IMG/VR virus record: IMGVR_UViG_3300045996_002337
Location: 124,001-188,000 of that record
DNA length: 64,000 bases
Reading direction: 5' to 3' (one strand)
The stretch's first letter is position 1. Each line of letters opens with the position of its first letter. The notes under the pieces are model-generated. The model worked only from the letters and a program-made list of their open reading frames with translations. It was not told where the DNA came from and did not search any database. The translations under genes and the position numbers were made by a program. This document shows, one piece after another, positions 27,539 through 42,280 of the stretch.

Positions 27539-27877
27539 TCACAAAATCTTTGGGGCGGCACAAACTACGCCACCGTGCTTGACGGCGTTGAGGATGTCAC
27601 GGACACGTTCAGCACCGACGTCGGACATGGCGCAGGCCAGCGGCGTCGCCCCATCGAGCATGGGGTGTGGCTGCCGTAGCCACATAGCCGCCTCTTCATC
27701 AGACTCGAAGGTGTCACGTGCCATCGCGTCAAGCTCGAGTAGGCGCAGCATGCGGTCCATTCCCAAGACATCCGCTTGGCTTTTCTTTTGACGCCATCTA
27801 CCGAGAAGATATCCTGCCCCACCAGCTAGTAAAATCGGGATGAAGAATCCAAACACATAGTGGGCATTTTCCATCAT
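27539..27877 (-). CDS. Xre/MbcA/ParS-type antitoxin C-terminal domain (DUF2384) with an N-terminal TM helix
   Basis: ARDTFESDEEAAMWLRQPHPMLDGATPL...GAERVRDILNAVKHG. Confidence 0.8.
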   Translation of the reverse strand: MMENAHYVFGFFIPILLAGGAGYLLGRWRQKKSQADVLGMDRMLRLLELDAMARDTFESDEEAAMWLRQPHPMLDGATPLACAMSDVGAERVRDILNAVKHGGVVCAAPKIL

Positions 27878-28353
27878 GACTTTTCACCAGTGCGTCTATC
27901 TTCACCCTTCCATTTCAGACGTTCGATTTCAGTCACTCTTGCACGTAGCTCGCTGGTAGAGAAGCTGTGCTTGCGGGTGTTGAAGTAAAACTCCATGTGC
28001 GTGAGGTCGTGCCCCGTGAACGGCTTGCCCTTGTATTCGTCACCCAAAATTCGAACGTCAATGGGGTACGCCAAAAGAATATCAAGAAGGTCCTTCTCAG
28101 TCGCGTACACGACGATTTCGTCAACATACTTGCAGGCCTCGAGTTGCACAAAGCGCTCGAAGACTGACTGGACTGGCTTGTTCTTTTCCGGCCGATCAAT
28201 CGTTGGATCCGTCTGCAGCCCCACAATGAGGAAGTCGCACTGACGCCTTGCTTCACGAAGCATCATGATGTGACCTGCATGGAAGAGGTCGAAGCAAGAT
28301 GCGGTGAAGCCGGTTCTTACGTGTTCAGCTGGGCGTTCCGATAATTTCGCCAT
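27874..28353 (-). CDS. Cytidylyltransferase (TagD/RfaE-II-like)
   Basis: GFTASCFDLFHAGH (HxGH), LIVGL, ER...CKYVDEI, GDEY. Confidence 0.88.
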   Translation of the reverse strand: MAKLSERPAEHVRTGFTASCFDLFHAGHIMMLREARRQCDFLIVGLQTDPTIDRPEKNKPVQSVFERFVQLEACKYVDEIVVYATEKDLLDILLAYPIDVRILGDEYKGKPFTGHDLTHMEFYFNTRKHSFSTSELRARVTEIERLKWKGEDRRTGEKS

Positions 28354-29057
28354 TTGATTCCCTGTTCAATATGTTGAATTGCCTTGTTCACGTCATCACC
28401 TGGAACTTGAAGATCCCATCGCGTAACGTTTGACCATGCTCGTTCTTCACCAGTGATGGAAAGGAGACGGTTGGTGTGAATATGAATAAGCTTCTCGGCC
28501 GCATCATGCATGTCCATTGATGTCAGCAGCGCAGAAACGTTCTGTGAGGATTTGGCGATATTGTGAAGCGCATTACGAATGTCCAGCGCGGTTCGGCGGT
28601 TCAGCCGGGCGATGCGCTCTGATTCAACGGTGTGTACGTAGATCTTGAAGATTTCCCATCCATTGTCTCTACACAGCTGCTCGTACATCTCGAGACCCTT
28701 CGGTTCCAAGATCACGATCGGCGCCCTGTCACCGTGCATCTTACCTTGCATTTCTTTATGCGTCACGCCGTAACGAACGCCCTGAAATGTGATGAGCTCT
28801 GCGAACTCACCGTTCTTTTCCATTGCCAACGATTGCTCAACGCTAATGAAGTTGTAGTCAACTCCTTCCACCTCACCATCGCGCCGCGCACGTGTAGTGG
28901 TGCTGACGATGCGCGAGAACATTGGCTCGAACTGATAGGCCTGCCCTCGCTTTGCCACGGCAGCAGGATCCGGTTTCGTCATCGCATCAAGCAGGTACGA
29001 CTTGCCAGAGCACGTAGGGGCCGTCATTGTGACGAGAGTAGGTTTGTCAAATTTCAT
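28317..29057 (-). CDS. gmk: Guanylate kinase-like NMP kinase
   Basis: APTCSGKS, STTTRARRDGEVEGVDYNF, GVRYG. Confidence 0.75.
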   Translation of the reverse strand: MKFDKPTLVTMTAPTCSGKSYLLDAMTKPDPAAVAKRGQAYQFEPMFSRIVSTTTRARRDGEVEGVDYNFISVEQSLAMEKNGEFAELITFQGVRYGVTHKEMQGKMHGDRAPIVILEPKGLEMYEQLCRDNGWEIFKIYVHTVESERIARLNRRTALDIRNALHNIAKSSQNVSALLTSMDMHDAAEKLIHIHTNRLLSITGEERAWSNVTRWDLQVPGDDVNKAIQHIEQGIKWRNYRNAQLNT

Positions 29058-29104
29058 GATGCAATTATACCAAAGTTAGATCTTGTTACAAATGAGTCGT
29101 AGGT

Positions 29105-30238
29105 TCAACAGAAGGCATTGTAAAACTCCAATCTATTCTTCCCAGCTCTCTTAGCGCAGTACATCGCCTTGTCAGCCTTATCACGCAGGTCGTTAATGTC
29201 TCCAGAATCATCAGGATAAATGGCGACACCAATGCTGGCGCCAATCTTGATGTTGCGCTCTCCAATTGGAACCCGCACTATCTCAATCATTGCCTGACCA
29301 ATCTCATGAATCGCCTTCAGGTCATGGGCTTCTCCAAGGATCGCGATAAATTCATCACCGCCAATGCGGGCGACAGTGTCAGTGTTTCGTACGACCCCTG
29401 ACAATCTGTCAGCAACTTCCTTCAGAACTTCGTCACCTACACCATGGCCGTAGGTGTCATTCACTGCCTTAAACCCGTCGAGATCAATAAACATAACAGC
29501 AACCTTATCACCAACTCGCTTTGCGTGAAGCGCCGCCATTTGAAGGCGGTCCTCAGCAACCCGAACTGAGGGCAATCCCGTAAGGTGGTCCTTACGGGCA
29601 AGTTGTTCAAGCTCAAGCTTTTGTTGATCCACAATTTCACGCTGTGATAAAAGTAGATCTCGCTGCTCAGCCACTTGATCAAGAAGATCGATGACCGTCC
29701 GCTGAAAGCGACTAACAGACACGAGTGTAATAAACGGCACTGCAACCGCAATCGCGAGAAAATTCAACCACCCTGACGGGCTTGCCACATGTTCAGCCAG
29801 ATTGAACGGGGGTTGAATCCATCCATTCATGAAGCAGATGCCAGCCGAAACCATTGAGGCGGCGGCCAGGACAGTAATTACAACGCTGGCTTCATGCGAG
29901 TACAGCATGCACACCAAGAACGTGCTGAACGCGACCCAAAAGAAACCAGTCCCCGTCATACCAAGAGAAAAAATCCCTGACAGCCCTAGCGTCATCGAGA
30001 AGATGATCAGCCCAATTGCCATGAAGTTGAAGCTAAGCTTGTTACGGGCAAGGGCAACAACGATGGTCGACAAGAAGAGGATGAAATGCAAGATCAGCTG
30101 TGTGTGCCAGCCAATATCAACCCCGCGCCAAATAATGATGGGTGCGTCAATGACCGCGAGGATGGCCGCCCCCACCCACACCTGTTTTACAAATCGGTGT
30201 TTGCTCTCTCGCAGCTTCGTGTGGGTGGTTGTCGTCAT
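29105..30238 (-). CDS. Membrane-bound diguanylate cyclase
   Basis: About 5-6 TM helices, coiled coil, DHLTGL, FIDLDGFKAVNDTYGH.VGD, RNTD I-site, GGDEF. Confidence 0.93.
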   Translation of the reverse strand: MTTTTHTKLRESKHRFVKQVWVGAAILAVIDAPIIIWRGVDIGWHTQLILHFILFLSTIVVALARNKLSFNFMAIGLIIFSMTLGLSGIFSLGMTGTGFFWVAFSTFLVCMLYSHEASVVITVLAAASMVSAGICFMNGWIQPPFNLAEHVASPSGWLNFLAIAVAVPFITLVSVSRFQRTVIDLLDQVAEQRDLLLSQREIVDQQKLELEQLARKDHLTGLPSVRVAEDRLQMAALHAKRVGDKVAVMFIDLDGFKAVNDTYGHGVGDEVLKEVADRLSGVVRNTDTVARIGGDEFIAILGEAHDLKAIHEIGQAMIEIVRVPIGERNIKIGASIGVAIYPDDSGDINDLRDKADKAMYCAKRAGKNRLEFYNAFC

Positions 30239-30252
30239 CGCTTTCTTACGCT

Positions 30253-31467
30253 TTATTCAATGTCTGGCTGGGTATCACCTGCGAGAAATTTTCGAACTTG
30301 TGCTAGGGTTGAGTTAACGCAAGGTTGCATGTCCGTGTACACGTATCGCCCGCAGCGACCGATGAAGTGAATGCCATCCGCCCTGGCCCGCTCACGGTAT
30401 TTCTTGTAGAGCTCACGGTTCGGGTCAACAGCATGAGACGTCTTCACTGGATAGTAGCGCTCCATGCTGTTGTCCTTGTAGTCGCACGGCTCTTCGATGG
30501 TAAGCGTCGTCCAGTGCGGATTGCCGCCGTGCCCCGGCAGCTGCTTCCACTCGGTGGCGCGGGTGTGCGGACCATCATGTGTGAAGTTGACGACTGGAGC
30601 GGAGAGCGCTTTCGGCAGCGGCACGCTGTACGTGTGGCACTTGATCGACCGCCAAGGTAGCTCGCCCATGTCGCAGTTGTAGTACGTGTCGATCGGCTCG
30701 GACGTGAAGACGGCGTCGAAGTTCACGTTGTCCCATTCGCGGTCGATGACGCATGGATACGAGTACGTCGCACCGTATTGCGGCAGTTGCTTCCGCTCGG
30801 TGCTGAGCTTGAGCGTGATGTTCGGGTGATCGAAGATGCGCTTGAACATCGCCGTGTACCCATCCTTTGGCAAGCACTGGTGCTTGTCCTTCGGGAAGTA
30901 GTAGGGGTCGTAGTCGCTCTTCGTGGGAATTCGTGCAGCCACAGATGTGGGCAAATCACTCAAATCCATGCCCCACATCTTCTTGGTGTAGGGCGCGAAG
31001 AACAGCTCGCAAAGCTCCTTGCCAACCGATGCCTCAACGTGCTGGCGCGAGTTGGTGATCTTGTCGTGCTTCACCAACTTTTTCTCAAAGAACTCCGTAA
31101 ACTGCCAGTCATCGAGGTAGTTCGGTCCATACGCGGCGACGATTTCATTCCCGAAAACCGTCTCAATGGTGCCTCGGTTGATTGGAAGCGGAACGTGCTG
31201 ACCATCTGGAAGCTGCGCGTGAACCCAGTGCTTGTACGGCAGCCACTCGGTGAAACGCGAAGCCCATTCCTGGGCGACGTCGTTGCTTCCGTGCCAGAGA
31301 TGGGGGCCATACTTATGCACCCGAATTCCATGCTCATTCACGAAATCATACGCGTTACCAGCGATGTGGTTGCGTTTGTCAATCACAAGCACCTCCCACC
31401 CTGCTTCTGCTAGCTCACGAGCAACAACTGCGCCGGCAAAACCAGCGCCAACAACCAAAGCTTTCAT
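30253..31467 (-). CDS. glf: UDP-galactopyranose mutase
   Basis: GAGFAG FAD motif, HIAGNAYD, HKYGPH, RYYP, GRCGRYVYTDM. Confidence 0.92.
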   Translation of the reverse strand: MKALVVGAGFAGAVVARELAEAGWEVLVIDKRNHIAGNAYDFVNEHGIRVHKYGPHLWHGSNDVAQEWASRFTEWLPYKHWVHAQLPDGQHVPLPINRGTIETVFGNEIVAAYGPNYLDDWQFTEFFEKKLVKHDKITNSRQHVEASVGKELCELFFAPYTKKMWGMDLSDLPTSVAARIPTKSDYDPYYFPKDKHQCLPKDGYTAMFKRIFDHPNITLKLSTERKQLPQYGATYSYPCVIDREWDNVNFDAVFTSEPIDTYYNCDMGELPWRSIKCHTYSVPLPKALSAPVVNFTHDGPHTRATEWKQLPGHGGNPHWTTLTIEEPCDYKDNSMERYYPVKTSHAVDPNRELYKKYRERARADGIHFIGRCGRYVYTDMQPCVNSTLAQVRKFLAGDTQPDIE

Positions 31468-31736
31468 TCTTTTCCCTTGTAAATGTGAATTGCGAAAGGA
31501 ACCTCATCGTTACAACTGATTTCCCAGAAGGCCACAAATCGCTGGGCCTTCATGTTGTATGTATGCTCAAGAACGTGCAACGAATAGCTGACATTGGTCG
31601 GGACGAGGCCCTTCAAAACCCCATGCCAAAACGATGCCAAATGCGATTCTTGTATATCGCGATATGGGCAGCCCGCAACATGGGTTTCGTAAAACTCAAG
31701 CAGAGCTTCAATTTGTTCTGGGGTGATATCGGTCAT
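31464..31736 (-). CDS. Hypothetical protein
   Basis: 90 aa, coupled between the glycosyltransferase and glf. Confidence 0.55.
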   Translation of the reverse strand: MTDITPEQIEALLEFYETHVAGCPYRDIQESHLASFWHGVLKGLVPTNVSYSLHVLEHTYNMKAQRFVAFWEISCNDEVPFAIHIYKGKE

Positions 31737-32917
31737 TTGTCAGCTTCCAAAATGGCGCGCAGTTCTTCCTTCTGCAGATCTTTGCTGAGGTGGTGCGTCT
31801 TGTACAGCGCGACCTTCTGTGCATCTGCAATGTCACGAAGCTCTTCATCGCTGAGGTTCACGAGATCGCTTGCCTTCAGGCCGTAGTACTCGTACTCGGC
31901 GCCGTAGTAGACACGCAGCTCCTTCTCTTCACCAATGAGGATAGATCCTGCATCAGCACACTGCAGAGGACGAGCGCGCCACCAGCCGGACCCAGCATGT
32001 TCGTAACCAGGCATCAAGCAGCCCCAGTCACGTGTGATGATTTCCACCATCTGATCTTCAGTCAGGCGTTTCTGTGTTTCAGCTTTCGACCCGTAAAGGT
32101 CAACAGCCCAACCACCGATCGTGCCTTCTTCGTCGTTCTTCGGGTTGCCCGTGTAGCCTTGCTTCTTCAGCCACTTCTGGGTCTTCGATTGAACGAGGGA
32201 GGCGAAGTTGAAGCGACGTTCCTTTTCAGGCAAACGAATCATTTTATAAATCGCAGCTGCATCGTCACCAAAGTTCAGCGTTGATTTCCAAGTCGGATCT
32301 TCCGAACCTTCATGAATCAAATCACCGATCTTTCGGTTGCGGTGGTACGGGTTCGGGTTGTAGACGAAGAGGCGGTCGCGTGGATAGGCGATCTTGTCGA
32401 ACAACAGGTGAGGACCGTAGTTCTCGTCGTCACCAACGTGCTCAGTGCGGAAGGCGCTGATCAGCATGCGATTCTTCATCGCGGTGATCGTAGCAATCGC
32501 GGCCATGAACTTGTCCTCATACGGCTGCACGACCTCGAGCGTCTTCTTGTTCACGTCGAGAATGAACTGCGCGAAGAGCTCATTCGGCTTCCCATCGCAC
32601 TTTGCCACGCCCTTGAACAGGTCAGGAACTTGCCAGTCATCGAACGCGAGGATGCACTTGGGATGTTGACTGATTGCCCAGAGGCCCTCGTAAACGGTGG
32701 TTGCCACGAGCTGACGAGGACCGGCAATGAACACGATGACTTCATCGTAGCCGCTCAGGTCTTCGCCGAGTGTGACTTGACGCTGCTCAACCTCGTGACC
32801 CATGTCAACGAGGCAGTTGAACAGAGAGTAGTGCGAAGGCACCACCTTCAAGTTTTGACGAAGGTAGAACTTGCGGGTGCACTGATTTTTGTTGAAGCCG
32901 GTGATGAGAATTTTCAT
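31733..32917 (-). CDS. GT-B glycosyltransferase resembling T4 DNA beta-glucosyltransferase
   Basis: MKILI...VVPS...LFNCLVDMGHEV...YDEVIVF and RARPLQCADAGSILI align by eye to T4 BGT. Confidence 0.65.
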   Translation of the reverse strand: MKILITGFNKNQCTRKFYLRQNLKVVPSHYSLFNCLVDMGHEVEQRQVTLGEDLSGYDEVIVFIAGPRQLVATTVYEGLWAISQHPKCILAFDDWQVPDLFKGVAKCDGKPNELFAQFILDVNKKTLEVVQPYEDKFMAAIATITAMKNRMLISAFRTEHVGDDENYGPHLLFDKIAYPRDRLFVYNPNPYHRNRKIGDLIHEGSEDPTWKSTLNFGDDAAAIYKMIRLPEKERRFNFASLVQSKTQKWLKKQGYTGNPKNDEEGTIGGWAVDLYGSKAETQKRLTEDQMVEIITRDWGCLMPGYEHAGSGWWRARPLQCADAGSILIGEEKELRVYYGAEYEYYGLKASDLVNLSDEELRDIADAQKVALYKTHHLSKDLQKEELRAILEADK

Positions 32918-33114
32918 TTGTTACCTAGTCGTTTGAGAAGTTCTTCACGGATGCCGTCTTGGTCGAACTCATACTTATTCGCGTGAAACCTGCAGTAAGG
33001 ATCATAGTGGTTGCAAGCCACAAATGTTTCAAACAGATCAATCAGCGCAGAATCTGAAAGAGCTTTCAGCTCTTCAAGGGACATCTGGTGATGATTGAAC
33101 ATCAGAAAAACCAA
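32914..33114 (-). CDS. Small hypothetical protein
   Basis: 66 aa coupled ORF. Confidence 0.5.
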   Translation of the reverse strand: MVFLMFNHHQMSLEELKALSDSALIDLFETFVACNHYDPYCRFHANKYEFDQDGIREELLKRLGNK

Positions 33115-33314
33115 CCCATGAATGAACCAAGTGGTGGAATGAAGATGCCGACCACGCGCACGATGCCAATGCCCGTGGAAAGCGCGTCAGACATGCCGAT
33201 AAGATCAGCGATGTTCAGGCACCACCCGACGATACCAAGCACCGCTAGCGTTAGCCAAAACAAAAGCGCCACAAGGCCAATTTTTTCATAGCGCCGCAAT
33301 CCAGTTCGCTTCAT
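33102..33314 (-). CDS. Small membrane protein
   Basis: Two hydrophobic helices. Confidence 0.6.
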   Translation of the reverse strand: MKRTGLRRYEKIGLVALLFWLTLAVLGIVGWCLNIADLIGMSDALSTGIGIVRVVGIFIPPLGSFMGWFF

Positions 33315-33385
33315 TTTCTTCCTTAAGGATGTTATGAGGTCTATTGTAACCCGACTTTGCCAGAGCCGATACCATATTTTATAGG

Positions 33386-33892
33386 TCAGAGCGCCCGTTT
33401 AAGTTCATCAATCAACGCGTACGGCTCTTTCGATTTGAACCGTTTTGCGAATTGGGGGTGATAGACCTTCACGTACTCAGATGTAGGAGCGTTGCGCCGC
33501 ACCCACATCTCGGCTTTGCCGCCGAGACAAATGATCGCTGGTTTACCGGCCATCAGATCCTGCACATAAACAGGGTCAAGCGTGGTCCCGTCTGCAAGTT
33601 CAGCGTTAAACCACACCAACTTTTCTTCCTCTATGCCCGCCTCGACAAGTTGCTTGTTGAGCCACAGGCTCGAGTTCTTTGTGCTGTAAAAGGGGGTGTG
33701 ATGGTAACCTGCAGTTGTTGGTCTACCTGGCCCGGGCGTGTCACCAATTACGATCGCCTTCGTTAAACCATTGTACTGTCGGTGCAGGGCCCGCAGGTAT
33801 ATATGCTTGCGAATCTGCAGCTGATCACGAATGCCCTTCTGAATTTCTGGTGTCAACTTGTCGAACGCCGCCCCAAAAATACTAGCGCCCAT
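33386..33892 (-). CDS. Uracil-DNA glycosylase superfamily protein (family 4-like)
   Basis: IVIGDTPG...PF...SS.WL...WFNA...ICLG.KA...YHPQF..R. Confidence 0.65.
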   Translation of the reverse strand: MGASIFGAAFDKLTPEIQKGIRDQLQIRKHIYLRALHRQYNGLTKAIVIGDTPGPGRPTTAGYHHTPFYSTKNSSLWLNKQLVEAGIEEEKLVWFNAELADGTTLDPVYVQDLMAGKPAIICLGGKAEMWVRRNAPTSEYVKVYHPQFAKRFKSKEPYALIDELKRAL

Positions 33893-34595
33893 TTTTTGCT
33901 CCAAGGGTGGTCATGCCAATGTTGAAAGAGGACAAGCTCGTGTTGATCGTGGCCCGCTTCGAGATAGCTTTTTCTTCAGAGCGAGGGTCATCGTTGATCG
34001 AGAGCTTCACGAAATCATGAAGACGATCATATTCGGCGTCCTCAACCCCCAATGTGGTCTTCGCGGCGGGGCGAAGCTCTTCCTTGATGATGTCGGCCTT
34101 CTTGCAGATCTGCCGCTGGAGCTCTTGGCATTCCTCAACAATTGCGGCGATCAAAGTTTTGAGGTCGGTGATCTCGTCGAGGTTAAAGTACGCGGAAGAA
34201 TACTCATTATCCAAGTACTTGATTTCATTGGGTGTGAGCTCGTGATTTTTGATTTGGTGTTCGGGAGCGAGCGACACACTGATGCCGTATTGGGCAAGGT
34301 GATCGCGTACGATTTGTCCGCTGCCAATGAAATCCAACACACGGTACATGCCTGCGAAGCTGTCAAGGAGGGCCTCCATGCGGCCCTTCGAGTTGGGCGT
34401 GGGCCAGCCGCCACCCAAATAATAAAGCGCGTCGACGGCTTTCTTCACATCTGCGTGTGAGACGCCTGCTGAATAAACGGCGATGTCAGTGAGCGCGCGG
34501 TACTGGCTATAGTGCTCAGTAATTTCTGCGCGAATCGCAACCGCCGTTTTGATCAGGCCGAGCGCCTCTTCAGCTTTCGCAACGAGTTTAGTCAT
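33882..34595 (-). CDS. Helical hypothetical protein
   Basis: MTKLVAK start with GGAG RBS. Confidence 0.6.
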   Translation of the reverse strand: MTKLVAKAEEALGLIKTAVAIRAEITEHYSQYRALTDIAVYSAGVSHADVKKAVDALYYLGGGWPTPNSKGRMEALLDSFAGMYRVLDFIGSGQIVRDHLAQYGISVSLAPEHQIKNHELTPNEIKYLDNEYSSAYFNLDEITDLKTLIAAIVEECQELQRQICKKADIIKEELRPAAKTTLGVEDAEYDRLHDFVKLSINDDPRSEEKAISKRATINTSLSSFNIGMTTLGAKNGR

Positions 34596-34644
34596 TGTGG
34601 CTCCAGTAAAAGAACATTCTAACACCTGTTGCCACAATTGTACA

Positions 34645-34860
34645 CTATCGCCTAATCAGATCCTGCGCAGCCACGTCAATCTTCAGGAGGTGAAGCTTTT
34701 CACAAAGCTCCTCGTCGCTGTGTATGTAAAGGAACTTGTCGGCGAGCAGTTCGTGCTTTGGATCCGCGTGATGGTAAATGAACGTGATATAGCCCTGGCT
34801 CTGACTCTCGTTCAACAGGCTCCGAATCCCGTGGGGATTTGAGATGGCGATGACCTTCAT
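34645..34860 (-). CDS. Hypothetical protein
   Basis: 71 aa. Confidence 0.5.
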   Translation of the reverse strand: MKVIAISNPHGIRSLLNESQSQGYITFIYHHADPKHELLADKFLYIHSDEELCEKLHLLKIDVAAQDLIRR

Positions 34861-35282
34861 AGCGGCTTGTCATTGACGAGGACGTCGACTTCGAACTTTT
34901 TCTGTTCCATGTCGTAGTAGAAAATGTTCACTGCGTCGATGCGTGCATTCGTGCTGTAACCACCGTCGGTGGTGTCCCGCTGGACGAAGCTGTCGCGAAA
35001 TTGATCGATGGCCTTTTTATCCATGCCAAGCTCAGAGAGGTGCTGCTCCAATGCTTGCTCCTCAAGGCGCCGATCGTAGAGCCCAGAGTACTCTGGGGTG
35101 CGCATGAACGCCAGGCCATAGAGGTGACCCTTCATCTCGTTGAACTGCAGACGCGGCTTGTAGAAGCACGACTCCGTCGAATAGGCATCTGCATCGCCAT
35201 GCATGAAGCCCACCTCGATCTCGTACACGTCCTTATAGGTAGGAAGCTCGACCTCTTTCCCAATCGTGAGCTTAACGGTCAT
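34857..35282 (-). CDS. Hypothetical protein
   Basis: MTVKLTIG start. Confidence 0.55.
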   Translation of the reverse strand: MTVKLTIGKEVELPTYKDVYEIEVGFMHGDADAYSTESCFYKPRLQFNEMKGHLYGLAFMRTPEYSGLYDRRLEEQALEQHLSELGMDKKAIDQFRDSFVQRDTTDGGYSTNARIDAVNIFYYDMEQKKFEVDVLVNDKPL

Positions 35283-35859
35283 GGAGCGCCTCGCTAAGAA
35301 TTTCATCCCTGCTTCGGAAACTGCCGTCTCTTGCGGTGACACAGATCATTCTCTTATCGAGGATGATTGACCTGTTAAAGGCAGCGACGAAGAGCTCCTG
35401 TTCATCACGACGCTTTGTATCATCAAAGCTTTCACCATCTGAAACGAAGTGCTTGCTGCGGTCAAAATCCTCAACGAGAAGAATGAGGCGAACGAGAGAA
35501 TCATTTAATTGGTGTACGCGCTCAAGCTCGAAGACGTAGTCGCCTGAGTAGCCGCGATAGAGAGGTGCGTAGACTGCTTCACCAAGATGCCAGCGGTCAA
35601 AGATGATGCTCGCACCTGACTGCGCAAGGATCATCGAGTGTGAAAAGCTGGCGCGCTGGTAGAGGTACGCCCCATTACGTGATTGACCTTGACCTTCAAA
35701 TTCCTTGTTCCACCGCTCGGCCGCCTCCTCGTAAACCTTCAGAATTTCTGGTTTGCCGAAATGAATGACCTGGAAGAAGCCTTCGCGCTGCTTAATTCCG
35801 TCGATGAGTGTTGACTTACCGAGACGGTCAAGCCCCTCAATTGCATATACTGATGGCAT
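35272..35859 (-). CDS. Thymidylate kinase-like dNMP kinase
   Basis: IEGLDRLGKST P-loop, FDRWHLGEAVY. Confidence 0.8.
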   Translation of the reverse strand: MPSVYAIEGLDRLGKSTLIDGIKQREGFFQVIHFGKPEILKVYEEAAERWNKEFEGQGQSRNGAYLYQRASFSHSMILAQSGASIIFDRWHLGEAVYAPLYRGYSGDYVFELERVHQLNDSLVRLILLVEDFDRSKHFVSDGESFDDTKRRDEQELFVAAFNRSIILDKRMICVTARDGSFRSRDEILSEALHDR

Positions 35860-36149
35860 TAAACCTCCAAAATAATTTGATAACGATTCAAGATTGCAAC
35901 GGTCCGCTCGGAGTCGTCCACCTGAGTAACATGGAGGTCAACGTCATCGGCCGCCCTCGCCTGAAAATCCTTATCGGTGATCTGCTCAATGGTGCCCATG
36001 AGCTTCATCGACGCGCGCTGGTATGTGCCTGGACCGAGGCGCGTCACATACAGCATCGCTGAGATTACCTGAAGTTCCTCAACGGTCATTCGAAGAGTGA
36101 ACTCACCCTCTCCGGCTGGCTCGTCATATTCACGTGAGCAGATATTCAT
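35859..36149 (-). CDS. Hypothetical protein
   Basis: 96 aa coupled ORF. Confidence 0.55.
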   Translation of the reverse strand: MNICSREYDEPAGEGEFTLRMTVEELQVISAMLYVTRLGPGTYQRASMKLMGTIEQITDKDFQARAADDVDLHVTQVDDSERTVAILNRYQIILEV

Positions 36150-36346
36150 TGCTTTGTCTTAGGTGTGTTTGCAAGGAGTGATTGTAACACGCGGTGCTGT
36201 GGGACGTCGATCTTTTCCCGTTCAACAAACAGGGCGCCGTCGTACAGCATTGGCTGGCCAATGAACGTAGACCAGTCATGGTTGAGTGATTCCGCGTTGA
36301 ACGTTGCATGCATCGCGGAACGACGAGCAGTGCGTGATTTCATCAA
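36146..36346 (-). CDS. Hypothetical protein
   Basis: 66 aa coupled ORF. Confidence 0.5.
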   Translation of the reverse strand: MMKSRTARRSAMHATFNAESLNHDWSTFIGQPMLYDGALFVEREKIDVPQHRVLQSLLANTPKTKQ

Positions 36347-37416
36347 ATGAATCCCGGGCCGCGTTTGCGACGTTGATTGTCGCTAGGTTGCTGGCAAAAG
36401 AGCTCTGCCAGAGTAACGCGCGTCTTGCCTTCTGGCACCTGCCCCTTGCCAGTTTCCTTGATGATTACTTCCGCTTCCGAGACGGTCAGAGGCCGAAATT
36501 CAACGACGTCAAAACAGCGGCCGGGCCGCATGAGAGCCGGGTCGATATCTGAGATGTTCGGCAGGTTGGTCGAGAAGATCATCTTCTTGTCGGAAGCCGA
36601 GATCAGACCATCCGACACGTTCAGAAATTTGTGCATCATGGTGTTGCCGTCTGCGCGTGATTGGAGGAACGCGTCTGCATCTTCCATCACGAGAAAGCGA
36701 CTGTCATCATCAATGAAGCCAGCGAACAGACCGTCGTCCATCATCACCTTCTCATCGTACGCGACCTTTGCATTTCCACCGGAGCGGTGGATCAGGTTCT
36801 TGATGAAGGTCGTCTTGCCAGTTCCCGGTGGGCCAATCAAGATCAGGACGCTGGCATCCGAATTCAGGTAATCGTCGATGTAGTCGATCAGGTTCTTCTG
36901 GATCCACGGATACGCACCGTTGATGGCCGGGCGGTAGTTCAGTGGAACGCGAATCGTATCACCTCGGGTGGAGTAGACCCACTCGATCAGGCTTTGGGCC
37001 CGCCGGAAATGTTCGTCAAAGCAACTAACCCACCGCTTAACCCACTCCATATCCCCGATATGCTCAACTGCAAGTTTGCCACGGGAGTGAGTGATGCGAA
37101 GAATTCCAGAGCTTTCAACGATCACCACACGCTGGGCGGAGTAGAAGGTGAATTTCTTCGCGCGATCAGGAACCCACTCTGCGAGAGAGAAACCTGCCGG
37201 TACGAGCCAGGTAACGTCGATCTGGATCGTAGCGGCACCACTCAGGTGCCGCTGGCGAAGGACATCCGCCAGAACCCATTCCTCTGAGCCGTAAACGCCG
37301 AGCACGACTTCGTTTCGTTCGACTGTTCTCGGCGCAAAAATGTGGGCGTCGTCCATTGCAGTGTCGTGCTGCTCAGGCAGCGACTCGAAATAATCTTGAT
37401 GGGCTGAATAGTTCAT
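36343..37416 (-). CDS. AAA+ ATPase (BCS1-like)
   Basis: GPPGTGKT, LVMEDAD, LNVSDG, FSTN...DPALMRPGRCFD. Confidence 0.88.
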   Translation of the reverse strand: MNYSAHQDYFESLPEQHDTAMDDAHIFAPRTVERNEVVLGVYGSEEWVLADVLRQRHLSGAATIQIDVTWLVPAGFSLAEWVPDRAKKFTFYSAQRVVIVESSGILRITHSRGKLAVEHIGDMEWVKRWVSCFDEHFRRAQSLIEWVYSTRGDTIRVPLNYRPAINGAYPWIQKNLIDYIDDYLNSDASVLILIGPPGTGKTTFIKNLIHRSGGNAKVAYDEKVMMDDGLFAGFIDDDSRFLVMEDADAFLQSRADGNTMMHKFLNVSDGLISASDKKMIFSTNLPNISDIDPALMRPGRCFDVVEFRPLTVSEAEVIIKETGKGQVPEGKTRVTLAELFCQQPSDNQRRKRGPGFI

Positions 37417-37434
37417 AATGAGATTATAACTCGT

Positions 37435-39186
37435 TTAATTATCACCAAGCTGCGAAGTGAAGGATGTTTTGAACTCGTCTGCCCAGGCGTTCGTCTTCGA
37501 GGTCCAGAGCCGCTGAATGCCGGCGTCCAAACAGTACGTGGTGGCCCAATCCGTTGCTGAACGTACGGAACGTCCGGCGCCCTGCGTAACCTTCATCAGC
37601 GCGGTCAGTGAGTAGATGTCAGGGTACACGTTCAGGATATGTGCAACCCGCTTGTCGCCGAGTGATCCGAACGGGGCTTTACACAGAATCTGAAAGCGAG
37701 AAAGATCCCCTGGCAAGTCAATACCTTCAAAGCCTGATGGCGTCAGCAGAACAGCCGGCCCTCGTGTGTACGCCTTAAACTCCTCAAGCACATCAGCCAA
37801 CTTCTCGCCACGTTGCTGTTCAAACACCCGGTAGTTTCCGCCCATTTGGCGAAGCGTTTCGGAAACCGATTGAACGATCACAAAAGACGGAGCTAGAATG
37901 ATGCCACGTTCCCCCTTCTTCGTATGGTGATCCACAATTTGATAGACGGAAGCACACAGCTTTTTAATGGTGGCCGGGTCCTTCATGGTCGTGTAGTTTA
38001 ACGCCTGCGTCTTGAAAAAGATAACCTTCTTGTTTTCTGGCGGAAACTGCGGATCAAGCTTGATGAACTTTGTTTCACCTGGCAGCGTCATCGTTCGCTT
38101 AGCAAATACGTCGCTGATTGTCGCTGACATGAGGAGATTGTGATCCGCGTTGTCGAGGGCCTCGAACATGTCACCAACAAAGATCGGCTTGACAGAGACT
38201 TCGTGCTCATGTTGCCCCTTCTTGGTGTCCTTTGCTTTGTGCTCGAACACGTGCGGATAACCAAAGATGATCAGGTCGTCGATCTTGCAACCGAGGTTGT
38301 AGTACTTCTTTGAAAGCTTTGAAAGCGTAAGGTACTTCTTGTGATTGCGATTGTTGCGATCAGCTTCACGGGCAGCTGCCTCCGAGATTTGCTTGTACGT
38401 GGCATGCAGCGTCTGGAGGTACGCCATGTACGTTTGGTCAGTGATCTTACCAGCGATCAGGTGTTCGCGAATTGTCTTCAGGTTCTTGAAGATGTCCGTG
38501 TTACCGACTGATAGTTGCTCACTGATTTCCTCGGCGAACTGGGCCAGCCGCTTCTCGGAGAAGAAGATGGCGTTGTGCTCAACGAACAGATCATTAATGA
38601 GGTGCGCTTCGTCAAACACACAGACGGACCGCTTTTCCATCGGGTGAGTAGAGTACATACGATCGAGAAAGTACCACGAGTAGTTCGTGATCAGGTGCCG
38701 TGAGCTGTTCTTCTTCGACCGTGAACGTTTGTACTCGCAGGAATCGCAGTGTGCCTGGATGATGGAGTCCATTGCCTGCTTTTGAAACATCACGATCGAG
38801 CATGACTCAGCGTTCTGCGGTTCCTCGGGCACCGACAGGGCAGAACACTCGTAGTTACCGGCACCTTTGATGATGTGGAAGATGTTGTCGTCAGGCGCCG
38901 AATCATCTACGAAAGTGTCATGATACTGGTGCGCAAGCACGTTCGTCGCTGTGAGGAGAAAGGAAGCGCCTGCCGATGTGCCAGGATGCTTAACTGTGTG
39001 GATCACATCTGCCACAATTGCACCAATGATCGACTTACCAGTTCCGGTTGGAGCGGACAGAATCACATTCTTCACCTTCTCATCGAGAAAGGCAATGAGA
39101 ATTTTGTCAATGTGTTCAACCTGGCGATCACGCGGTTTGAACCCGATGCGATCATAGGCTTCTAGAATTTGTTTTTCGTATCTCAT
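37435..39186 (-). CDS. dinG: DinG/YoaA-family SF2 helicase
   Basis: APTGTGKS, DEAH, MSAT, EGIDLPG, QGAGRSVRS. Confidence 0.88.
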   Translation of the reverse strand: MRYEKQILEAYDRIGFKPRDRQVEHIDKILIAFLDEKVKNVILSAPTGTGKSIIGAIVADVIHTVKHPGTSAGASFLLTATNVLAHQYHDTFVDDSAPDDNIFHIIKGAGNYECSALSVPEEPQNAESCSIVMFQKQAMDSIIQAHCDSCEYKRSRSKKNSSRHLITNYSWYFLDRMYSTHPMEKRSVCVFDEAHLINDLFVEHNAIFFSEKRLAQFAEEISEQLSVGNTDIFKNLKTIREHLIAGKITDQTYMAYLQTLHATYKQISEAAAREADRNNRNHKKYLTLSKLSKKYYNLGCKIDDLIIFGYPHVFEHKAKDTKKGQHEHEVSVKPIFVGDMFEALDNADHNLLMSATISDVFAKRTMTLPGETKFIKLDPQFPPENKKVIFFKTQALNYTTMKDPATIKKLCASVYQIVDHHTKKGERGIILAPSFVIVQSVSETLRQMGGNYRVFEQQRGEKLADVLEEFKAYTRGPAVLLTPSGFEGIDLPGDLSRFQILCKAPFGSLGDKRVAHILNVYPDIYSLTALMKVTQGAGRSVRSATDWATTYCLDAGIQRLWTSKTNAWADEFKTSFTSQLGDN

Positions 39187-39497
39187 AGACCCTTCATGAG
39201 GTCACGCAGGACCTCATCGTCGATTTCTTTGGCGATTTCAGTTGACAGTTTGGACAGGATTTCTTTCTCGGCCTCAGCCCATGACTTTCGTGGACCTTTC
39301 CACTTGTGCATGTGCCCGCACTGCTCTAGATACATTTTACCGATGACGCGTTCCGAGTCTGGCACCATGAGAGATTCAATGGCCATTCGCCTGGCACGGT
39401 GCATGGCCATTTGCGTGTCTTCGCTTGGGCGATTGTTCCGATCGTTAAGTACCTCGGCGGTCTCCAACATCAGCTTTTCAAAACGCGTCATCGTCAT
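39183..39497 (-). CDS. Hypothetical protein
   Basis: MTMTRFEK start. Confidence 0.5.
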   Translation of the reverse strand: MTMTRFEKLMLETAEVLNDRNNRPSEDTQMAMHRARRMAIESLMVPDSERVIGKMYLEQCGHMHKWKGPRKSWAEAEKEILSKLSTEIAKEIDDEVLRDLMKGL

Positions 39498-39499
39498 TC

Positions 39500-40465
39500 T
39501 CAGTCCTCTTGGCCAAACAGGGCGTGCATGGCTTCTTCGTCTTTTCCAAGCAAGGCTTTCACACACGTCTGCCAGTACGGTGAGAGCATGGCAAAGGCAC
39601 CAACTGCTTCAAAGTCAAAGTCGTCAGGAGCGCCTGCAGCCTGCCACGCTGCCTCAACACCTGCAAGGCCAGTAAGAATTTCGTCGTCGAAACGATCCAT
39701 TGGAATCATCTCAAGGTCAAATGCCTTCTCGTTGGCGATGATCTTTTCGGCCATCTCAAAGTGACGATCATAGATGTGCATCGAGCCAGCGTTGTGGAAA
39801 TAATGACCAAGGCCCAGATCAGGATACATTTCCTTCAGCTGCACCTGCATGCACTCTTGAAGCATTGTAAACTGAAACACGTCGTTTGTAAACCCGAGAA
39901 TGATGTCATTCGAGCGCATGTTACAGATCATGTGCAGCTTGTTCTCGCGAATGAACCAGTGCAGGGTCAAGGTGCACGGAACGTCCTTGTTGCCATCGTG
40001 ACGGTCGGCCGGCATGTGGATGTTCATGATGGCCTGGCGGGAATCCTTGTCCTTCTTCAGGAGCTCAACGGTGCTGTTCCATTGTGACAGCCCAGACACG
40101 TTCATTCGCTCATCATGGCCAAAAAGGCGGTGACCGTAGTTGGAGTTGATCGTGCCCTTTTCGTAACCTGCGACGTCACCCGAGTTCGTGATGTTCGCCC
40201 AGAACTTTGAGTAAGGGAGGATGCCCTTCGGGTCGTTTGAACCTGTGAGGTACCAGATGAACTCACCAAGGAGGTACTTTGTGTTCGTGTTACGCTCAGG
40301 AAATGTAATCACCCGATTACGCGCGGACTGCAGGGTGATGTTGTAGTTCAGCAGCTCTCTGGTGGTTGTACCACGGGGATGAGCAACCATCCCGTACTCC
40401 ATCAGCTGGGCCAGGCAGGTGCGAAAATCGTTGTTGAGATAACCTGTTTGAATGTGTTCTGTCAT
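39500..40465 (-). CDS. 42: dCMP hydroxymethylase-like (T4 gp42 family)
   Basis: TS fold with DVPCT, MRSNDIILGFTND (Asp, dCMP-specific), GSMHIYDRH. Confidence 0.8.
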   Translation of the reverse strand: MTEHIQTGYLNNDFRTCLAQLMEYGMVAHPRGTTTRELLNYNITLQSARNRVITFPERNTNTKYLLGEFIWYLTGSNDPKGILPYSKFWANITNSGDVAGYEKGTINSNYGHRLFGHDERMNVSGLSQWNSTVELLKKDKDSRQAIMNIHMPADRHDGNKDVPCTLTLHWFIRENKLHMICNMRSNDIILGFTNDVFQFTMLQECMQVQLKEMYPDLGLGHYFHNAGSMHIYDRHFEMAEKIIANEKAFDLEMIPMDRFDDEILTGLAGVEAAWQAAGAPDDFDFEAVGAFAMLSPYWQTCVKALLGKDEEAMHALFGQED

Positions 40466-40519
40466 GAGTTCTCCTTCTTGAATGTTCAATTGTAACTTAT
40501 TGGGAACCTGCCCAAGATC

Positions 40520-40527
40520 CATAAATA
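40520..40527 (+). promoter_or_regulatory. Late promoter CATAAATA
   Basis: 34 nt upstream of the fibre gene. Confidence 0.6.
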
Positions 40528-40561
40528 GGTTGGTAAGCTTACCTGTCACAGGACGACGAAA

Positions 40562-42280
40562 ATGATCAAACATCTCGCGGGCGGCGCAGTCATTAACTAC
40601 GGACCAACCCTCCCTTCTTCAGCGGAAGCCATCGACGGCTCCCTTTTCTACAAGTCAACAGGTGCCGATACCGGCCTCTATCTTTTCAGCTTTACGCAGG
40701 ATTCATCCACCACGATCGTGGGTGATCAGGTTGCGCAGAACTGGACTGCAGTTGCATCGCCTTCGCTCTTCGTGAGCAAGAAGGGTGATGAAATGACCGG
40801 GGCATTGACAGTTTCCACGCCGAACGTTGGTACCTTTGGTTCTGGTGCTGGTAGCATCATTCTAAACAACACCACTGGCACGACAAACTCACGCGCAGGT
40901 GCCATTCAATGGGTCTTCACGGGATCGACAAACGTTTCTGCCCAGATCGATACCGTCGTTGGAGCCACCAACAGCAAAGGCACCCTCTCCTTCTCGACCC
41001 GTGGAACATCTGGCATCATTGCTGAGCGGATGAAGATCGATGAAACCGGTGTTTACATCGGCACTGGCAAGGTCTGGCACTCTGAAAACGATGGGGCTGG
41101 TTCCGGTCTTGACGCTGACCTGCTTGACGGACAAAGCTCGGCCTTCTTCCAAAATGCCTCGAACATTACCGCTGGTACGTTAGATGTATCACGGCTACCG
41201 TTCACCCCTGTTCAACAGGGCGGAGGCGGGAACCAAACCGGAAGCAAGGTCTACATCGGCTGGTTAAACACGGCCCAGCTTGGTCTACAGGTTGATACGA
41301 CAAACTTCGGCTCCTCATGGCCTATCAGCGTCTCGGGTTCATCGTCAACTTCGAACTACTCCAACACCTCGGGCACCGCCACAAACGCAACTGACGCGAC
41401 GTCTGCTCGCTACCTCCGTGCGGGTGCAGGTGCTGCTGCGACAAATATGGCGTTCAACTGGGAAGCTCGTCCAGGCACACCAACATATGTTTGGGGCTCA
41501 GATGGCGTTGCTAACCACTACGTTTGGTCGCCATCGACAATGACGGTGGGTGCTGCGACGAACGCAACCAACGCGTCGAACGCGTCGAACGCGACCTTCC
41601 TTCGTCAAGGCGGAAATGCTGGCGGAACTGCAATGTCATTCCACTGGTCCGGTCAAGACGTCAACCCAACGTGGATTTGGGGCGGTTCCGACGGTGTCAA
41701 CCATTACGTCTATAGCCCATTTAGAGTTGTAAACGCCGCGACTAGTGGCTCTTACGGGTGGACTGGCGTAAACAACTTCTATTCGAATCAGAACACTGGA
41801 GGATCGGGCCAGGCCGCAATTATTGCCTCTGCGGACCTTGTCGGCCGAGGCGGCATTATCAAGTTCTCTAACTTGTCACAGGCTGTTAACGTTGGCATGG
41901 ATTCTGACAACGTCTTCCGCATCGGTGGACATTCATGGGGTGCAAACCGCATGCAGCTTGATGCGTCTGGTAACGTTACCTTCTCTGGAAACGTAACTGC
42001 ATTCTCTGACGCCCGGTTGAAGTCTGACGTTGTCCTGATCAGCTCTGCCCTCGACAAGGTAGATGCTCTTCGCGGCGTTACCTTCACTCAGACCGAAAGC
42101 GAACAGCGCTCGACTGGTCTTATCGCTCAAGAGCTGCAATTAGTGCTCCCTGAGGCAGTGCATGAGAACGAAGATGGTTATCTCTCTGTTGCGTACGGCA
42201 ACTTAGCAGGTCTTTTCGTCGAGGCCATTAAGGAACTTCGAGCTGAAATTACAGACCTGAAGGCACAACTCGGAAAGTAA
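40562..42280 (+). CDS. Tail fibre with C-terminal S74 intramolecular chaperone
   Basis: GSGLDADLLDG, FSDARLK...LRGV..F...GLIAQE...PEAV...VAYG...EAIKEL. Confidence 0.88.
   Translation: MIKHLAGGAVINYGPTLPSSAEAIDGSLFYKSTGADTGLYLFSFTQDSSTTIVGDQVAQNWTAVASPSLFVSKKGDEMTGALTVSTPNVGTFGSGAGSIILNNTTGTTNSRAGAIQWVFTGSTNVSAQIDTVVGATNSKGTLSFSTRGTSGIIAERMKIDETGVYIGTGKVWHSENDGAGSGLDADLLDGQSSAFFQNASNITAGTLDVSRLPFTPVQQGGGGNQTGSKVYIGWLNTAQLGLQVDTTNFGSSWPISVSGSSSTSNYSNTSGTATNATDATSARYLRAGAGAAATNMAFNWEARPGTPTYVWGSDGVANHYVWSPSTMTVGAATNATNASNASNATFLRQGGNAGGTAMSFHWSGQDVNPTWIWGGSDGVNHYVYSPFRVVNAATSGSYGWTGVNNFYSNQNTGGSGQAAIIASADLVGRGGIIKFSNLSQAVNVGMDSDNVFRIGGHSWGANRMQLDASGNVTFSGNVTAFSDARLKSDVVLISSALDKVDALRGVTFTQTESEQRSTGLIAQELQLVLPEAVHENEDGYLSVAYGNLAGLFVEAIKELRAEITDLKAQLGK

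What the first reader, a model, noticed from the sequence alone, without database searches (positions are those of the whole stretch)
29105..30238. Phage-encoded intact membrane diguanylate cyclase
Seen: complete catalytic signatures (DHLTGL, DLDGFK.VND..GH..GD, GGDEF), an RNTD inhibitory site five residues upstream, and a multi-TM sensor. A guanylate kinase-like gene is its immediate neighbour. Established: c-di-GMP controls motility, pili, EPS and surface receptors. Inference: the phage raises c-di-GMP to remodel the host surface (superinfection exclusion, biofilm) or to interfere with nucleotide signalling. DGCs are uncommon in lytic phages to my knowledge.
Basis: partly seen in the sequence, partly recalled or inferred. 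Interest (0 to 1): 0.75.

Follow-up and report, generated by a model that had tools for sequence, protein, structure and literature searches.

The report
Jumbo-phage membrane diguanylate cyclase, accessory gene
A 350-kb uncultivated soil jumbo phage carries an intact, long-conserved membrane enzyme that should make the bacterial second messenger c-di-GMP; it is an accessory gene dropped into a variable slot of a conserved phage module, real and moderately interesting but a standard enzyme of a known kind.

Summary
ORF 29105-30238 (-) encodes a 377-aa protein with six transmembrane helices (MASE11-like), a long signalling helix and a canonical GGDEF domain. The window lies in a 349,660-bp IMG/VR virus record (CheckV 97%) that is distantly related to Ralstonia jumbo phage RsoM2USA.

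The gene is not a recent host capture:
- The closest bacterial proteins are 40-45% identical.
- Three collinear phage contigs carry it at 56% identity, with synonymous sites saturated and pN about 0.3.
- Its composition matches the rest of the phage.

It is an accessory gene. At least seven related jumbo phages have the same GT-Glf-Gmk-nucleotidyltransferase module with no GGDEF gene between Glf and Gmk, and that junction holds other small cargo ORFs. So the guanylate-kinase adjacency does not indicate coupling. The kinase belongs to a conserved module that looks like DNA or sugar-nucleotide modification.

The phage encodes no EAL, HD-GYP, PilZ or MshEN, so the host must read any c-di-GMP it makes. 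Two relatives carry a different, soluble SGDEF protein at another locus. GGDEF ORFs also occur in at least nine unrelated viral contigs over 200 kb.

What the enzyme does during infection (motility or pili off, EPS on, superinfection exclusion) remains inference. This is a new member of a known kind; interest about 0.5.

The parts
29105..30238 (-). Complete ORF of the phage diguanylate cyclase (377 aa plus stop)
29711..30184 (-). Six-helix membrane domain (residues 19-176), MASE11-like. R38 and W157 are invariant in 56 homologues.
29594..29710 (-). Signalling helix / coiled-coil linker (residues 177-215), continuous with TM6. Homologues differ here by indels of 7 or 14 residues.
29132..29593 (-). 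GGDEF catalytic domain (residues 216-369)
29432..29485 (-). DxD...FK..ND..GH..GD segment (residues 252-269). By PleD numbering from memory it holds the metal-binding Asp, the phosphate Lys, and the guanine-reading Asn260 and Asp269.
   Evidence: residue roles from established PleD/WspR literature
29378..29389 (-). I-site RNTD (residues 284-287), five residues before GGDEF. RxxD is kept in all five phage-clade copies.
29348..29362 (-). GGDEF active-site motif (residues 293-297)
30253..31467 (-). Upstream flank of the insertion slot: UDP-galactopyranose mutase (Glf) homologue. Its stop lies 14 nt before the cyclase start.
28317..29057 (-). Downstream flank of the slot: guanylate-kinase-like P-loop kinase. 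It is part of the conserved module, not of the cyclase insertion.

Best explanation
The ORF encodes an inner-membrane, signal-gated, product-inhibited diguanylate cyclase of the bacterial MASE11-GGDEF type. It is carried as an accessory ('moron'-like) gene by an uncultivated jumbo phage of about 350 kb with no integrase, probably infecting a soil betaproteobacterium.

How it got there: an ancestor of a sub-lineage of this phage group took the gene from a bacterial MASE11-GGDEF lineage long ago. It sits in a variable cargo slot between the Glf and Gmk-like genes of a conserved module and has stayed under purifying selection since.

How it should work: as a parallel dimer held by TM6 and the signalling helix, it should condense two GTP into c-di-GMP on the cytoplasmic face of the membrane. 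The six-helix membrane domain sets the activity and the RxxD I-site caps it.

What reads the signal: the phage encodes no recognisable c-di-GMP phosphodiesterase or receptor, so the host's own c-di-GMP network must read it. The expected outcome is flagella and type IV pili off, exopolysaccharide and adhesion on, and possibly effects on the cell cycle. During the long jumbo-phage cycle this would keep the infected cell sessile among susceptible neighbours and/or block superinfection.

Shown: gene integrity, fold, motifs, phage residence, age, selection, accessory status, lack of phage-encoded partners.
Inferred: enzymatic activity (very likely), expression with the surrounding replication and nucleotide genes, and the benefit to the phage (plausible, untested).
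For: - Domain, motifs and fold. The GGDEF model superposes on GTP-bound PA0575 at 1.1 A, on the T. maritima cyclase at 1.4 A and on YfiN at 1.3 A.
- Specificity residues are canonical. Asn260 and Asp269 are conserved, and every catalytic column is invariant or nearly so in 56 homologues.
- Phage residence. It lies in a single 349,660-bp virus record at 97% completeness, with a terminase and T4-type topoisomerase and helicase around it.
- Independent assemblies L002 (ENA) and L003 (Logan) are collinear with the window and carry the gene in the same slot.
- Age and selection. The three phage copies form a clade (SH-aLRT 99) inside a five-member clade (98) nested among bacterial MASE11-GGDEF proteins. 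pS is about 0.8 (saturated) against pN of 0.27-0.39, in both the membrane and the catalytic halves. GC, GC3 and codon adaptation fall within 1 SD of 37 window genes.
- The best bacterial matches are 40-45% identical. Only 1 of 401 Burkholderiales genomes sampled has a full-length homologue, at 40%.
- Accessory status. At least seven related phages have Glf followed directly, or after other small ORFs, by the Gmk-like gene without a GGDEF gene.
- No EAL, HD-GYP, PilZ or MshEN in the phage genome.
- Candidate host-type genomes hold 28-78 GGDEF matches each, so a rich network is there to plug into.
- Recurrent recruitment. A different SGDEF protein occurs in two relatives, and intact GGDEF ORFs occur in at least nine unrelated viral contigs over 200 kb.
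- Precedent for lytic phages raising c-di-GMP: YIP peptides (PMC8085984). c-di-GMP-induced PlzR blocks type IV pili (PMC11461919).
Against: - There are no expression data. The only public run holding this DNA is one soil DNA metagenome, share 0.06.
- Enzyme activity is not measured.
- The host is unknown. 'Betaproteobacterium' rests only on the nearest isolated phage (48% topoisomerase identity) and on the taxa of bacterial homologues.
- Most relatives of the phage do without the gene, so it is dispensable for the basic cycle.
- High c-di-GMP can also sensitise cells to some phages (the N4 receptor glycan, PMC8669472), so the direction of any benefit is uncertain.
- The MASE11 Pfam score for this protein is just under the curated cut-off (26.1 against 27.3).
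- Residue roles are mapped from remembered PleD numbering, not from a tool alignment to PleD.
Confidence: 0.6

Rival explanations
1. The cyclase and the neighbouring guanylate-kinase-like enzyme form a functional pair. The kinase would feed GMP to GDP, and on to GTP, to the cyclase or recycle its product.
For: The two genes are 47 nt apart here, adjacent in L003, and in the same order in L002. The kinase keeps the GMP-binding residues of yeast Guk1.
Against: In at least seven related phages the same kinase follows Glf with no GGDEF gene, so it belongs to the GT-Glf-kinase-nucleotidyltransferase module. In L002 a 173-aa ORF separates the two. The more distant copy P0004 is not next to a kinase, and no kinase lies in the short flank seen beside P0010. 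The complex prediction gave no answer, which counts neither way.
Confidence: 0.08
2. Neutral passenger: a captured host gene that is not expressed or not useful to the phage.
For: It is absent from most relatives, and it sits in a slot that collects varied small ORFs. No expression data exist.
Against: It has stayed intact through divergence that saturated synonymous sites, with pN about 0.3 in both domains. All catalytic and I-site residues are kept in five copies. Composition is ameliorated. It is tightly packed in a same-strand gene run, 14 nt after the Glf stop.
Confidence: 0.1
3. Counter-defence. The c-di-GMP, or a side product, interferes with cyclic-nucleotide immune signalling (CBASS, type III CRISPR, Panoptes-like decoy systems) rather than with motility or biofilm control.
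For: GGDEF and Cas10/mCpol palm domains are related (weak Pfam Cas10-Cmr2_palm2 hit). Decoy-nucleotide logic exists (PMC12657218, listed). An orphan antitoxin-like gene lies two genes away.
Against: There is no PADLOC match. The Cas10 palm hit is far under its cut-off (16.7 against 27). The residues are those of a GTP-specific cyclase. The closest relatives are ordinary bacterial sensor cyclases. To my knowledge no defence system in proteobacteria with native c-di-GMP signalling is blocked by c-di-GMP.
Confidence: 0.07
4. A phage-owned circuit. The membrane domain senses the state of the infected envelope (superinfection, membrane stress), and c-di-GMP acts on an unrecognised phage-encoded receptor to time lysis or other phage decisions.
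For: The sensor half is as constrained as the catalytic half. R38 and W157, near the ends of TM1 and TM6 in the model, are invariant. The I-site is kept.
Against: No PilZ, MshEN, EAL or HD-GYP is found in the phage. The same sensor residues are conserved in bacterial homologues, so no phage-specific input is indicated.
Confidence: 0.08
5. The enzyme makes another product (cGAMP or c-di-AMP, as Hypr GGDEF enzymes do), or acts only as a c-di-GMP receptor.
For: Some GGDEF enzymes are promiscuous (established knowledge).
Against: The position that is Ser/Thr in Hypr enzymes is Asp269 here. Asn260 and the full GGDEF motif are intact.
Confidence: 0.03
6. Assembly chimera or host contamination of the viral contig.
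For: It is a metagenomic assembly.
Against: Phage genes flank it on both sides for over 100 kb. The same insertion at the same junction appears in two independent assemblies from other samples. Composition matches the phage.
Confidence: 0.01

Closest known systems
Bacterial MASE11-GGDEF diguanylate cyclases (for example the Rhodocyclaceae MAG protein P0019, Duganella sp. LX20W P0055 and the bacterial clade P0005-P0009)
   Same: Same architecture over the full length: six TM helices, a signalling helix and a GGDEF domain with an I-site. Identity is 32-45% with 95-99% coverage, and the sensor residues R38 and W157 are the same.
   Different: This one is encoded by a jumbo phage, forms its own clade, and has phage-like GC of 50.5%. 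No MASE11 ligand or function is known for any member.
YfiN/TpbB/DgcN, WspR, PleD and DgcB (studied cyclases with RxxD product inhibition and helical linkers)
   Same: The GGDEF fold superposes at 1.3-2.5 A. The coiled-coil-to-GGDEF arrangement resembles GCN4-WspR and DgcB. An I-site is present.
   Different: The input domains differ (CHASE8-HAMP, REC). The NCBIfam DgcN match covers only the C-terminal domain and lies far under its cut-off (153 against 325 bits).
YIP peptides of PB1-like Pseudomonas phages (PMC8085984)
   Same: A lytic phage raising host c-di-GMP, with reduced motility and more biofilm when expressed.
   Different: YIPs are small peptides that activate the host cyclase YfiN. 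Here the phage brings the cyclase itself.
GGDEF genes annotated in other large phages (Bacillus phage G gp350 'probable DgcQ', Microcystis phage MaAM05; seven PHROG families)
   Same: Phage-borne GGDEF domains that are mostly uncharacterised.
   Different: They match only over the GGDEF domain, at 33-36% identity in phage G and MaAM05. The IMG/VR jumbo contigs have other N-terminal regions and no synteny. None is documented as conserved within a phage lineage as shown here.
Soluble 203-aa SGDEF protein of related jumbo phages (L215, L216)
   Same: Same broad phage group. GGDEF-family domain with RxxD five residues before the motif.
   Different: 30% identity, no membrane domain, SGDEF and NT..(G/T)H variants, and a different genomic locus. 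This was an independent acquisition.

Membership tests
GGDEF diguanylate cyclase (Pfam PF00990 / TIGR00254) | Profile match above the curated cut-off | tested here: met
   PF00990 scores 152.4 bits against 23.8. TIGR00254 scores 146.3 against 37.4.
GGDEF diguanylate cyclase | Intact GG[D/E]EF active-site motif | tested here: met
   GGDEF at residues 293-297. G294, D295 and E296 are invariant in 56 homologues.
GGDEF diguanylate cyclase | Metal-binding Asp of DxD, guanine-reading Asn and Asp, phosphate-binding Lys and Lys/Arg | tested here: met
   D252, D254, K257, N260, D269, K363 and K367 are present. Their roles are assigned from remembered PleD numbering (D327, K332, N335, D344, K442, R446), not from a tool alignment to PleD.
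GGDEF diguanylate cyclase | Palm-like GGDEF fold | tested here: met
   AF2 model at pLDDT 95.5. Foldseek gives 1.1-1.5 A rmsd to PA0575, the T. maritima cyclase and YfiN GGDEF domains.
GGDEF diguanylate cyclase | Makes c-di-GMP from GTP | not testable with these tools
   Needs an enzyme assay or an in vivo reporter.
I-site (product-inhibited) cyclases | RxxD five residues upstream of GG[D/E]EF | tested here: met
   RNTD at 284-287. RxxD is kept in P0002, P0003, P0004 and P0010.
MASE11 membrane sensor domain (PF20969) | Profile match above the curated cut-off; multi-TM domain N-terminal to an output domain | tested here: inconclusive
   This protein scores 26.1 bits against a cut-off of 27.3. 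Precomputed Pfam lists PF20969 for it and for most full-length homologues. Six TM helices are modelled.
Hypr GGDEF (cGAMP-producing) | Ser/Thr in place of the guanine-reading Asp (PleD D344 position) | tested here: not met
   Asp269 is present and nearly invariant.
Cas10 / mCpol palm cyclases (defence) | Profile match to the Cas10 palm; defence-system context | tested here: not met
   PF22335 scores 16.7 bits against 27. No PADLOC hit.
Phage accessory (moron-type) gene | Present in some and absent in other closely related, collinear genomes at a variable junction | tested here: met
   Present in the window, L002 and L003. Absent at the Glf-Gmk junction of at least seven relatives, which hold nothing or other small ORFs there.
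Guanylate kinase (the neighbouring gene, 28317-29057) | Equivalog-level match; GMP-binding residues | tested here: inconclusive
   The Pfam cut-off is met (53.7 against 25.2), but TIGR03263 scores 60 against 160. The GMP-binding segment aligns to yeast Guk1 1EX6 with the S/T-T-R..R.GE..G..Y.F and E...G..YG motifs kept.

The most novel reading that the evidence does not exclude
The cyclase is the input end of a phage-owned second-messenger circuit. Its membrane domain reads the state of the infected envelope, and c-di-GMP acts on a still unrecognised phage receptor. That receptor would set lysis timing, superinfection immunity or activity of the adjacent glycosylation module. At least two different GGDEF genes entered this one jumbo-phage group, which would then reflect a general need of giant phages for such a circuit.
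Probability: 0.08. Interest if true: 0.8.

Novelty: new member of a known kind. Interest (0 to 1): 0.5.

Why it matters
Phages are known to tamper with c-di-GMP through small peptides, but in the literature searched I found no functional study of a phage-encoded diguanylate cyclase.

This case offers a clean natural experiment. Closely related jumbo phages exist with the MASE11-GGDEF gene, with a different SGDEF gene, or with neither at this locus. If the enzyme is active during infection, it would show a virus directly writing the host's main lifestyle signal. That has consequences for motility, biofilm and superinfection in soil bacteria. It would also give a handle on the unknown input of the MASE11 sensor family.

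Tried and rejected
- Megablast of 27-33 kb against GenBank phages: no match.
- Single-protein pattern scan of IMG/VR: nothing. The alignment-based scan found only GGDEF-domain-level relatives in unrelated contigs.
- RsoM2USA, the nearest isolated phage, has neither GGDEF nor Glf.
- Sequencing runs: only one soil DNA run with a 0.06 share and no RNA, so read laying was not used and expression could not be tested.
- Complex prediction of the cyclase dimer with the kinase: 'no answer', which is not evidence either way.
- PADLOC: no defence-family match for the cyclase or its neighbours.
- Promoter and terminator scan: counts no higher than shuffles, so no operon boundaries are claimed.
- The idea that Gmk adjacency means substrate channelling: rejected on comparative grounds.
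Only a betaproteobacterial tendency can be stated.
- The secondary I-site Arg (PleD R390) could not be mapped confidently.

Full report
**1. Observation**

The minus-strand ORF 29105-30238 is open for 377 codons.
- Pfam gives GGDEF (PF00990) at E=1.2e-44 over residues 216-369, and MASE11 (PF20969) at 26.1 bits, just under its 27.3 cut-off.
- NCBIfam gives TIGR00254 at 146 bits and only domain-level matches to named cyclases.
- Six hydropathy peaks lie between residues 19 and 176.

An AlphaFold2 model built on 56 homologues has mean pLDDT 95.5. It shows six TM helices, the last running on as one helix (154-215) into a GGDEF fold. Foldseek superposes the catalytic domain on GTP-bound PA0575 (1.1 A), the T. 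maritima cyclase (1.4-1.5 A) and YfiN (1.3 A). It also finds the coiled-coil-plus-GGDEF arrangement of GCN4-WspR and DgcB.

By PleD numbering, taken from memory of the literature and not tool-tested, the following are all present:
- metal-binding Asp (D252)
- phosphate Lys (K257)
- guanine-reading Asn260 and Asp269
- GGDEF Asp295 and Glu296
- Lys363 and Lys367

These columns are invariant or nearly so in 56 homologues. Asp269 argues against a Hypr (cGAMP-type) enzyme.

**2. Whose gene is it**

The window is positions 124,001-188,000 of a 349,660-bp IMG/VR virus record with CheckV completeness 97%. This is its only GGDEF match.
- Around the gene lie T4-type topoisomerase II subunits and a helicase. 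The record has a terminase and no tyrosine integrase; other routes to lysogeny are not excluded.
- No GenBank phage is similar at the DNA level.
- The nearest isolated phage, by topoisomerase at 48% identity, is Ralstonia jumbo phage RsoM2USA. That phage has neither GGDEF nor Glf.

**3. Relatives of the protein**

In 5.8 billion proteins the best hits are P0002 and P0003 (56%), P0004 (48%) and P0010 (46%). Next come bacterial MASE11-GGDEF proteins at 32-45%.
- P0003 lies on a 57-kb contig (L002) and P0002 on a 5-kb contig (L003). Both are collinear with the window: helicase 83%, Glf 66-73%, nucleotidyltransferase 86-91%.
- P0006 and P0014 have plainly bacterial neighbours.
- P0004's neighbours match other parts of this phage genome at 42-50%, so it is probably a more distant phage relative with the gene at another position. 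P0010's context is unclear.

A maximum-likelihood tree puts the three collinear phage copies in one clade (SH-aLRT 99). That clade sits inside a five-member clade with P0004 and P0010 (98), nested among bacterial proteins.

Between phage copies, synonymous differences are saturated (pS about 0.8) while pN is 0.27-0.39. The membrane half and the catalytic half show similar values. The gene's GC (0.505), GC3 (0.553) and codon adaptation (0.74) lie within one SD of 37 window genes. Only 1 of 401 sampled Burkholderiales genomes has a full-length homologue, at 40%.

So the gene is old in the phage lineage and under purifying selection. The 'recent capture' refutation fails. Linker indels among homologues are 7 or 14 residues, whole heptads, as expected for a working signalling helix.

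**4. The neighbourhood changes the reading of the kinase**

The 394-aa ORF upstream (31733-32917) has no family hit but 682 homologues. More than 120 of them are at least 64% identical, on contigs up to 358 kb. Its model (pLDDT 86) is a GT-B fold whose best solved matches are the T4 DNA beta- and alpha-glucosyltransferases.

In relatives the order runs:
- thymidylate-synthase-like gene
- helicase
- AAA ATPase
- thymidylate-kinase-like gene
- epimerase (in some)
- GT
- Glf
- Gmk-like kinase
- nucleotidyltransferase

No GGDEF gene is present in that run.

Across seven distinct relatives, Glf is followed by the kinase either directly (L183, L185 type, L211) or after unrelated small ORFs (L206, L207, L208, L209). 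Only the window, L002 and L003 have the cyclase there. The cyclase is therefore cargo in a variable slot of a conserved module. Its adjacency to the kinase is not evidence of coupling.

The kinase itself keeps the GMP-binding residues of yeast Guk1 but is far below the guanylate-kinase equivalog cut-off. A complex prediction of the cyclase dimer with the kinase gave no answer.

**5. What the phage lacks, and what recurs**

The phage genome has no EAL, HD-GYP, PilZ or MshEN match. Any c-di-GMP it makes must be read and degraded by the host. Three Burkholderiales genomes that hold bacterial homologues have 28-78 GGDEF matches each, so such hosts have large c-di-GMP networks.

Two relatives, one a complete 358,444-bp genome with terminal repeats, carry a different GGDEF-family gene at another locus. 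It is a soluble 203-aa protein with SGDEF and an RxxD site. The two copies are 62% identical to each other and 30% identical to this cyclase.

Intact GGDEF ORFs with varied N-termini also occur in at least nine unrelated IMG/VR contigs over 200 kb. They occur too in Bacillus phage G (gp350) and Microcystis phage MaAM05. PHROGs holds seven families that match the domain, all of unknown function.

**6. Mechanism**

Most likely this is a dimeric inner-membrane cyclase that makes c-di-GMP from GTP. It would be gated through the MASE11-like domain and signalling helix and capped by I-site feedback. I infer from position alone that it is expressed with the surrounding replication and nucleotide genes.

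The signal would drive the host's own effectors towards a sessile state without pili or flagella and with exopolysaccharide production.

Two published results support the direction, though not this case:
- Lytic PB1-like phages raise c-di-GMP by activating host YfiN with YIP peptides, cutting motility and raising biofilm (PMC8085984).
- Raised c-di-GMP induces PlzR, which blocks type IV pili, a common phage receptor (PMC11461919).

The opposite effect is also possible, since phage N4 needs a c-di-GMP-dependent glycan (PMC8669472, listed). My confidence that it is an active cyclase is about 0.85, that it is a conserved phage accessory gene about 0.95, and that the stated benefit is right about 0.4.

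**7. Novelty and score**

The protein is a standard member of a known bacterial family, and phage-borne GGDEF genes are already annotated. New here are three things:
- documented long-term conservation in a jumbo-phage sub-lineage
- the gene's nature as an insertion into a conserved module
- recruitment of a second, unrelated GGDEF gene in the same phage group

I found no functional study of a phage-encoded cyclase. Verdict: new member of a known kind, interest 0.5.

Noticed in passing
window 27874-40573 (minus strand); relatives L183, L185, L186: A conserved module that looks like DNA or sugar-nucleotide modification. In order: divergent thymidylate-synthase-family gene (39500-40573, 88 bits; a canonical ThyA sits at 15588-16484), helicase, AAA ATPase, thymidylate-kinase-like gene (35272-35859), a GT-B glycosyltransferase whose best structural matches are the T4 DNA beta/alpha-glucosyltransferases (31733-32917), UDP-galactopyranose mutase (30253-31467), Gmk-like kinase, and an RfaE-II/TagD-like nucleotidyltransferase (27874-28353). 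The GT has 682 homologues on contigs up to 358 kb. This may be a hypermodified (glycosylated hydroxymethyl-pyrimidine, possibly galactofuranose) DNA system, and could be more novel than the cyclase.
   Followed up: partly
window 27539-27877 (-): A 112-aa protein with an N-terminal hydrophobic helix and the Xre/MbcA/ParS antitoxin C-terminal toxin-binding domain (Pfam E=3.7e-15; NCBIfam RES/Xre antitoxin subfamily). No RES toxin was noticed beside it. It is absent from every related locus examined, including L002 and L003. It may be an orphan antitoxin used against host RES-type toxin systems.
   Followed up: partly
L216:1459-2070 (-) and L215:1408-2019 (+): Related jumbo phages (one complete, 358,444 bp with terminal repeats) carry a soluble 203-aa coiled-coil plus SGDEF protein with RxxD five residues upstream. 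It lies at a different locus, next to conserved 197-210-aa and 362-377-aa ORFs. The two copies are 62% identical to each other and 30% identical to the window's cyclase.
   Followed up: partly
Glf-Gmk junction: window 29058-30252; L206:8986-9585, L207:8158-8963, L208:8271-9142, L209:9009-9314, L002:9740-9997 and 11181-11702: The junction between Glf and the Gmk-like gene is a variable cargo slot. Different relatives hold nothing, one or two unrelated small ORFs of 85-199 aa, or the cyclase.
   Followed up: partly
window 29064-29091 (-): A sigma-70-like site, TTGTAA-16 nt-TATAAT with an upstream TG (10 of 12 matches). Its -10 hexamer ends 7 nt before the ATG of the Gmk-like gene, which would give a near-leaderless transcript. 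The number of such sites in the region is not above shuffles, so this may be chance.
   Followed up: no
G000:C1:337772-339156 (outside the window): Two adjacent Terminase_6N matches on the same strand, the second with one in-frame TGA. This may be a split, interrupted or duplicated large terminase gene.
   Followed up: no
IMG/VR loci L098, L099, L102, L105, L107, L123, L140, L154, L162: GGDEF-domain ORFs of 260-548 aa with 0-7 hydrophobic segments in viral contigs of 137-543 kb that share no synteny with this phage. All but one (L102) have intact GGDEF motifs. L099 (358 kb) has six TM segments and an RxxD site.
   Followed up: partly
window 40562-42280 (+) and 4896-10379 (-): A tail-fibre-like gene (C-terminal 180 aa match long-tail-fibre distal subunit PHROGs) sits divergently beside the thymidylate-synthase-like gene, inside the replication region. 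A 1827-aa ORF at 4896-10379 was not examined.
   Followed up: no
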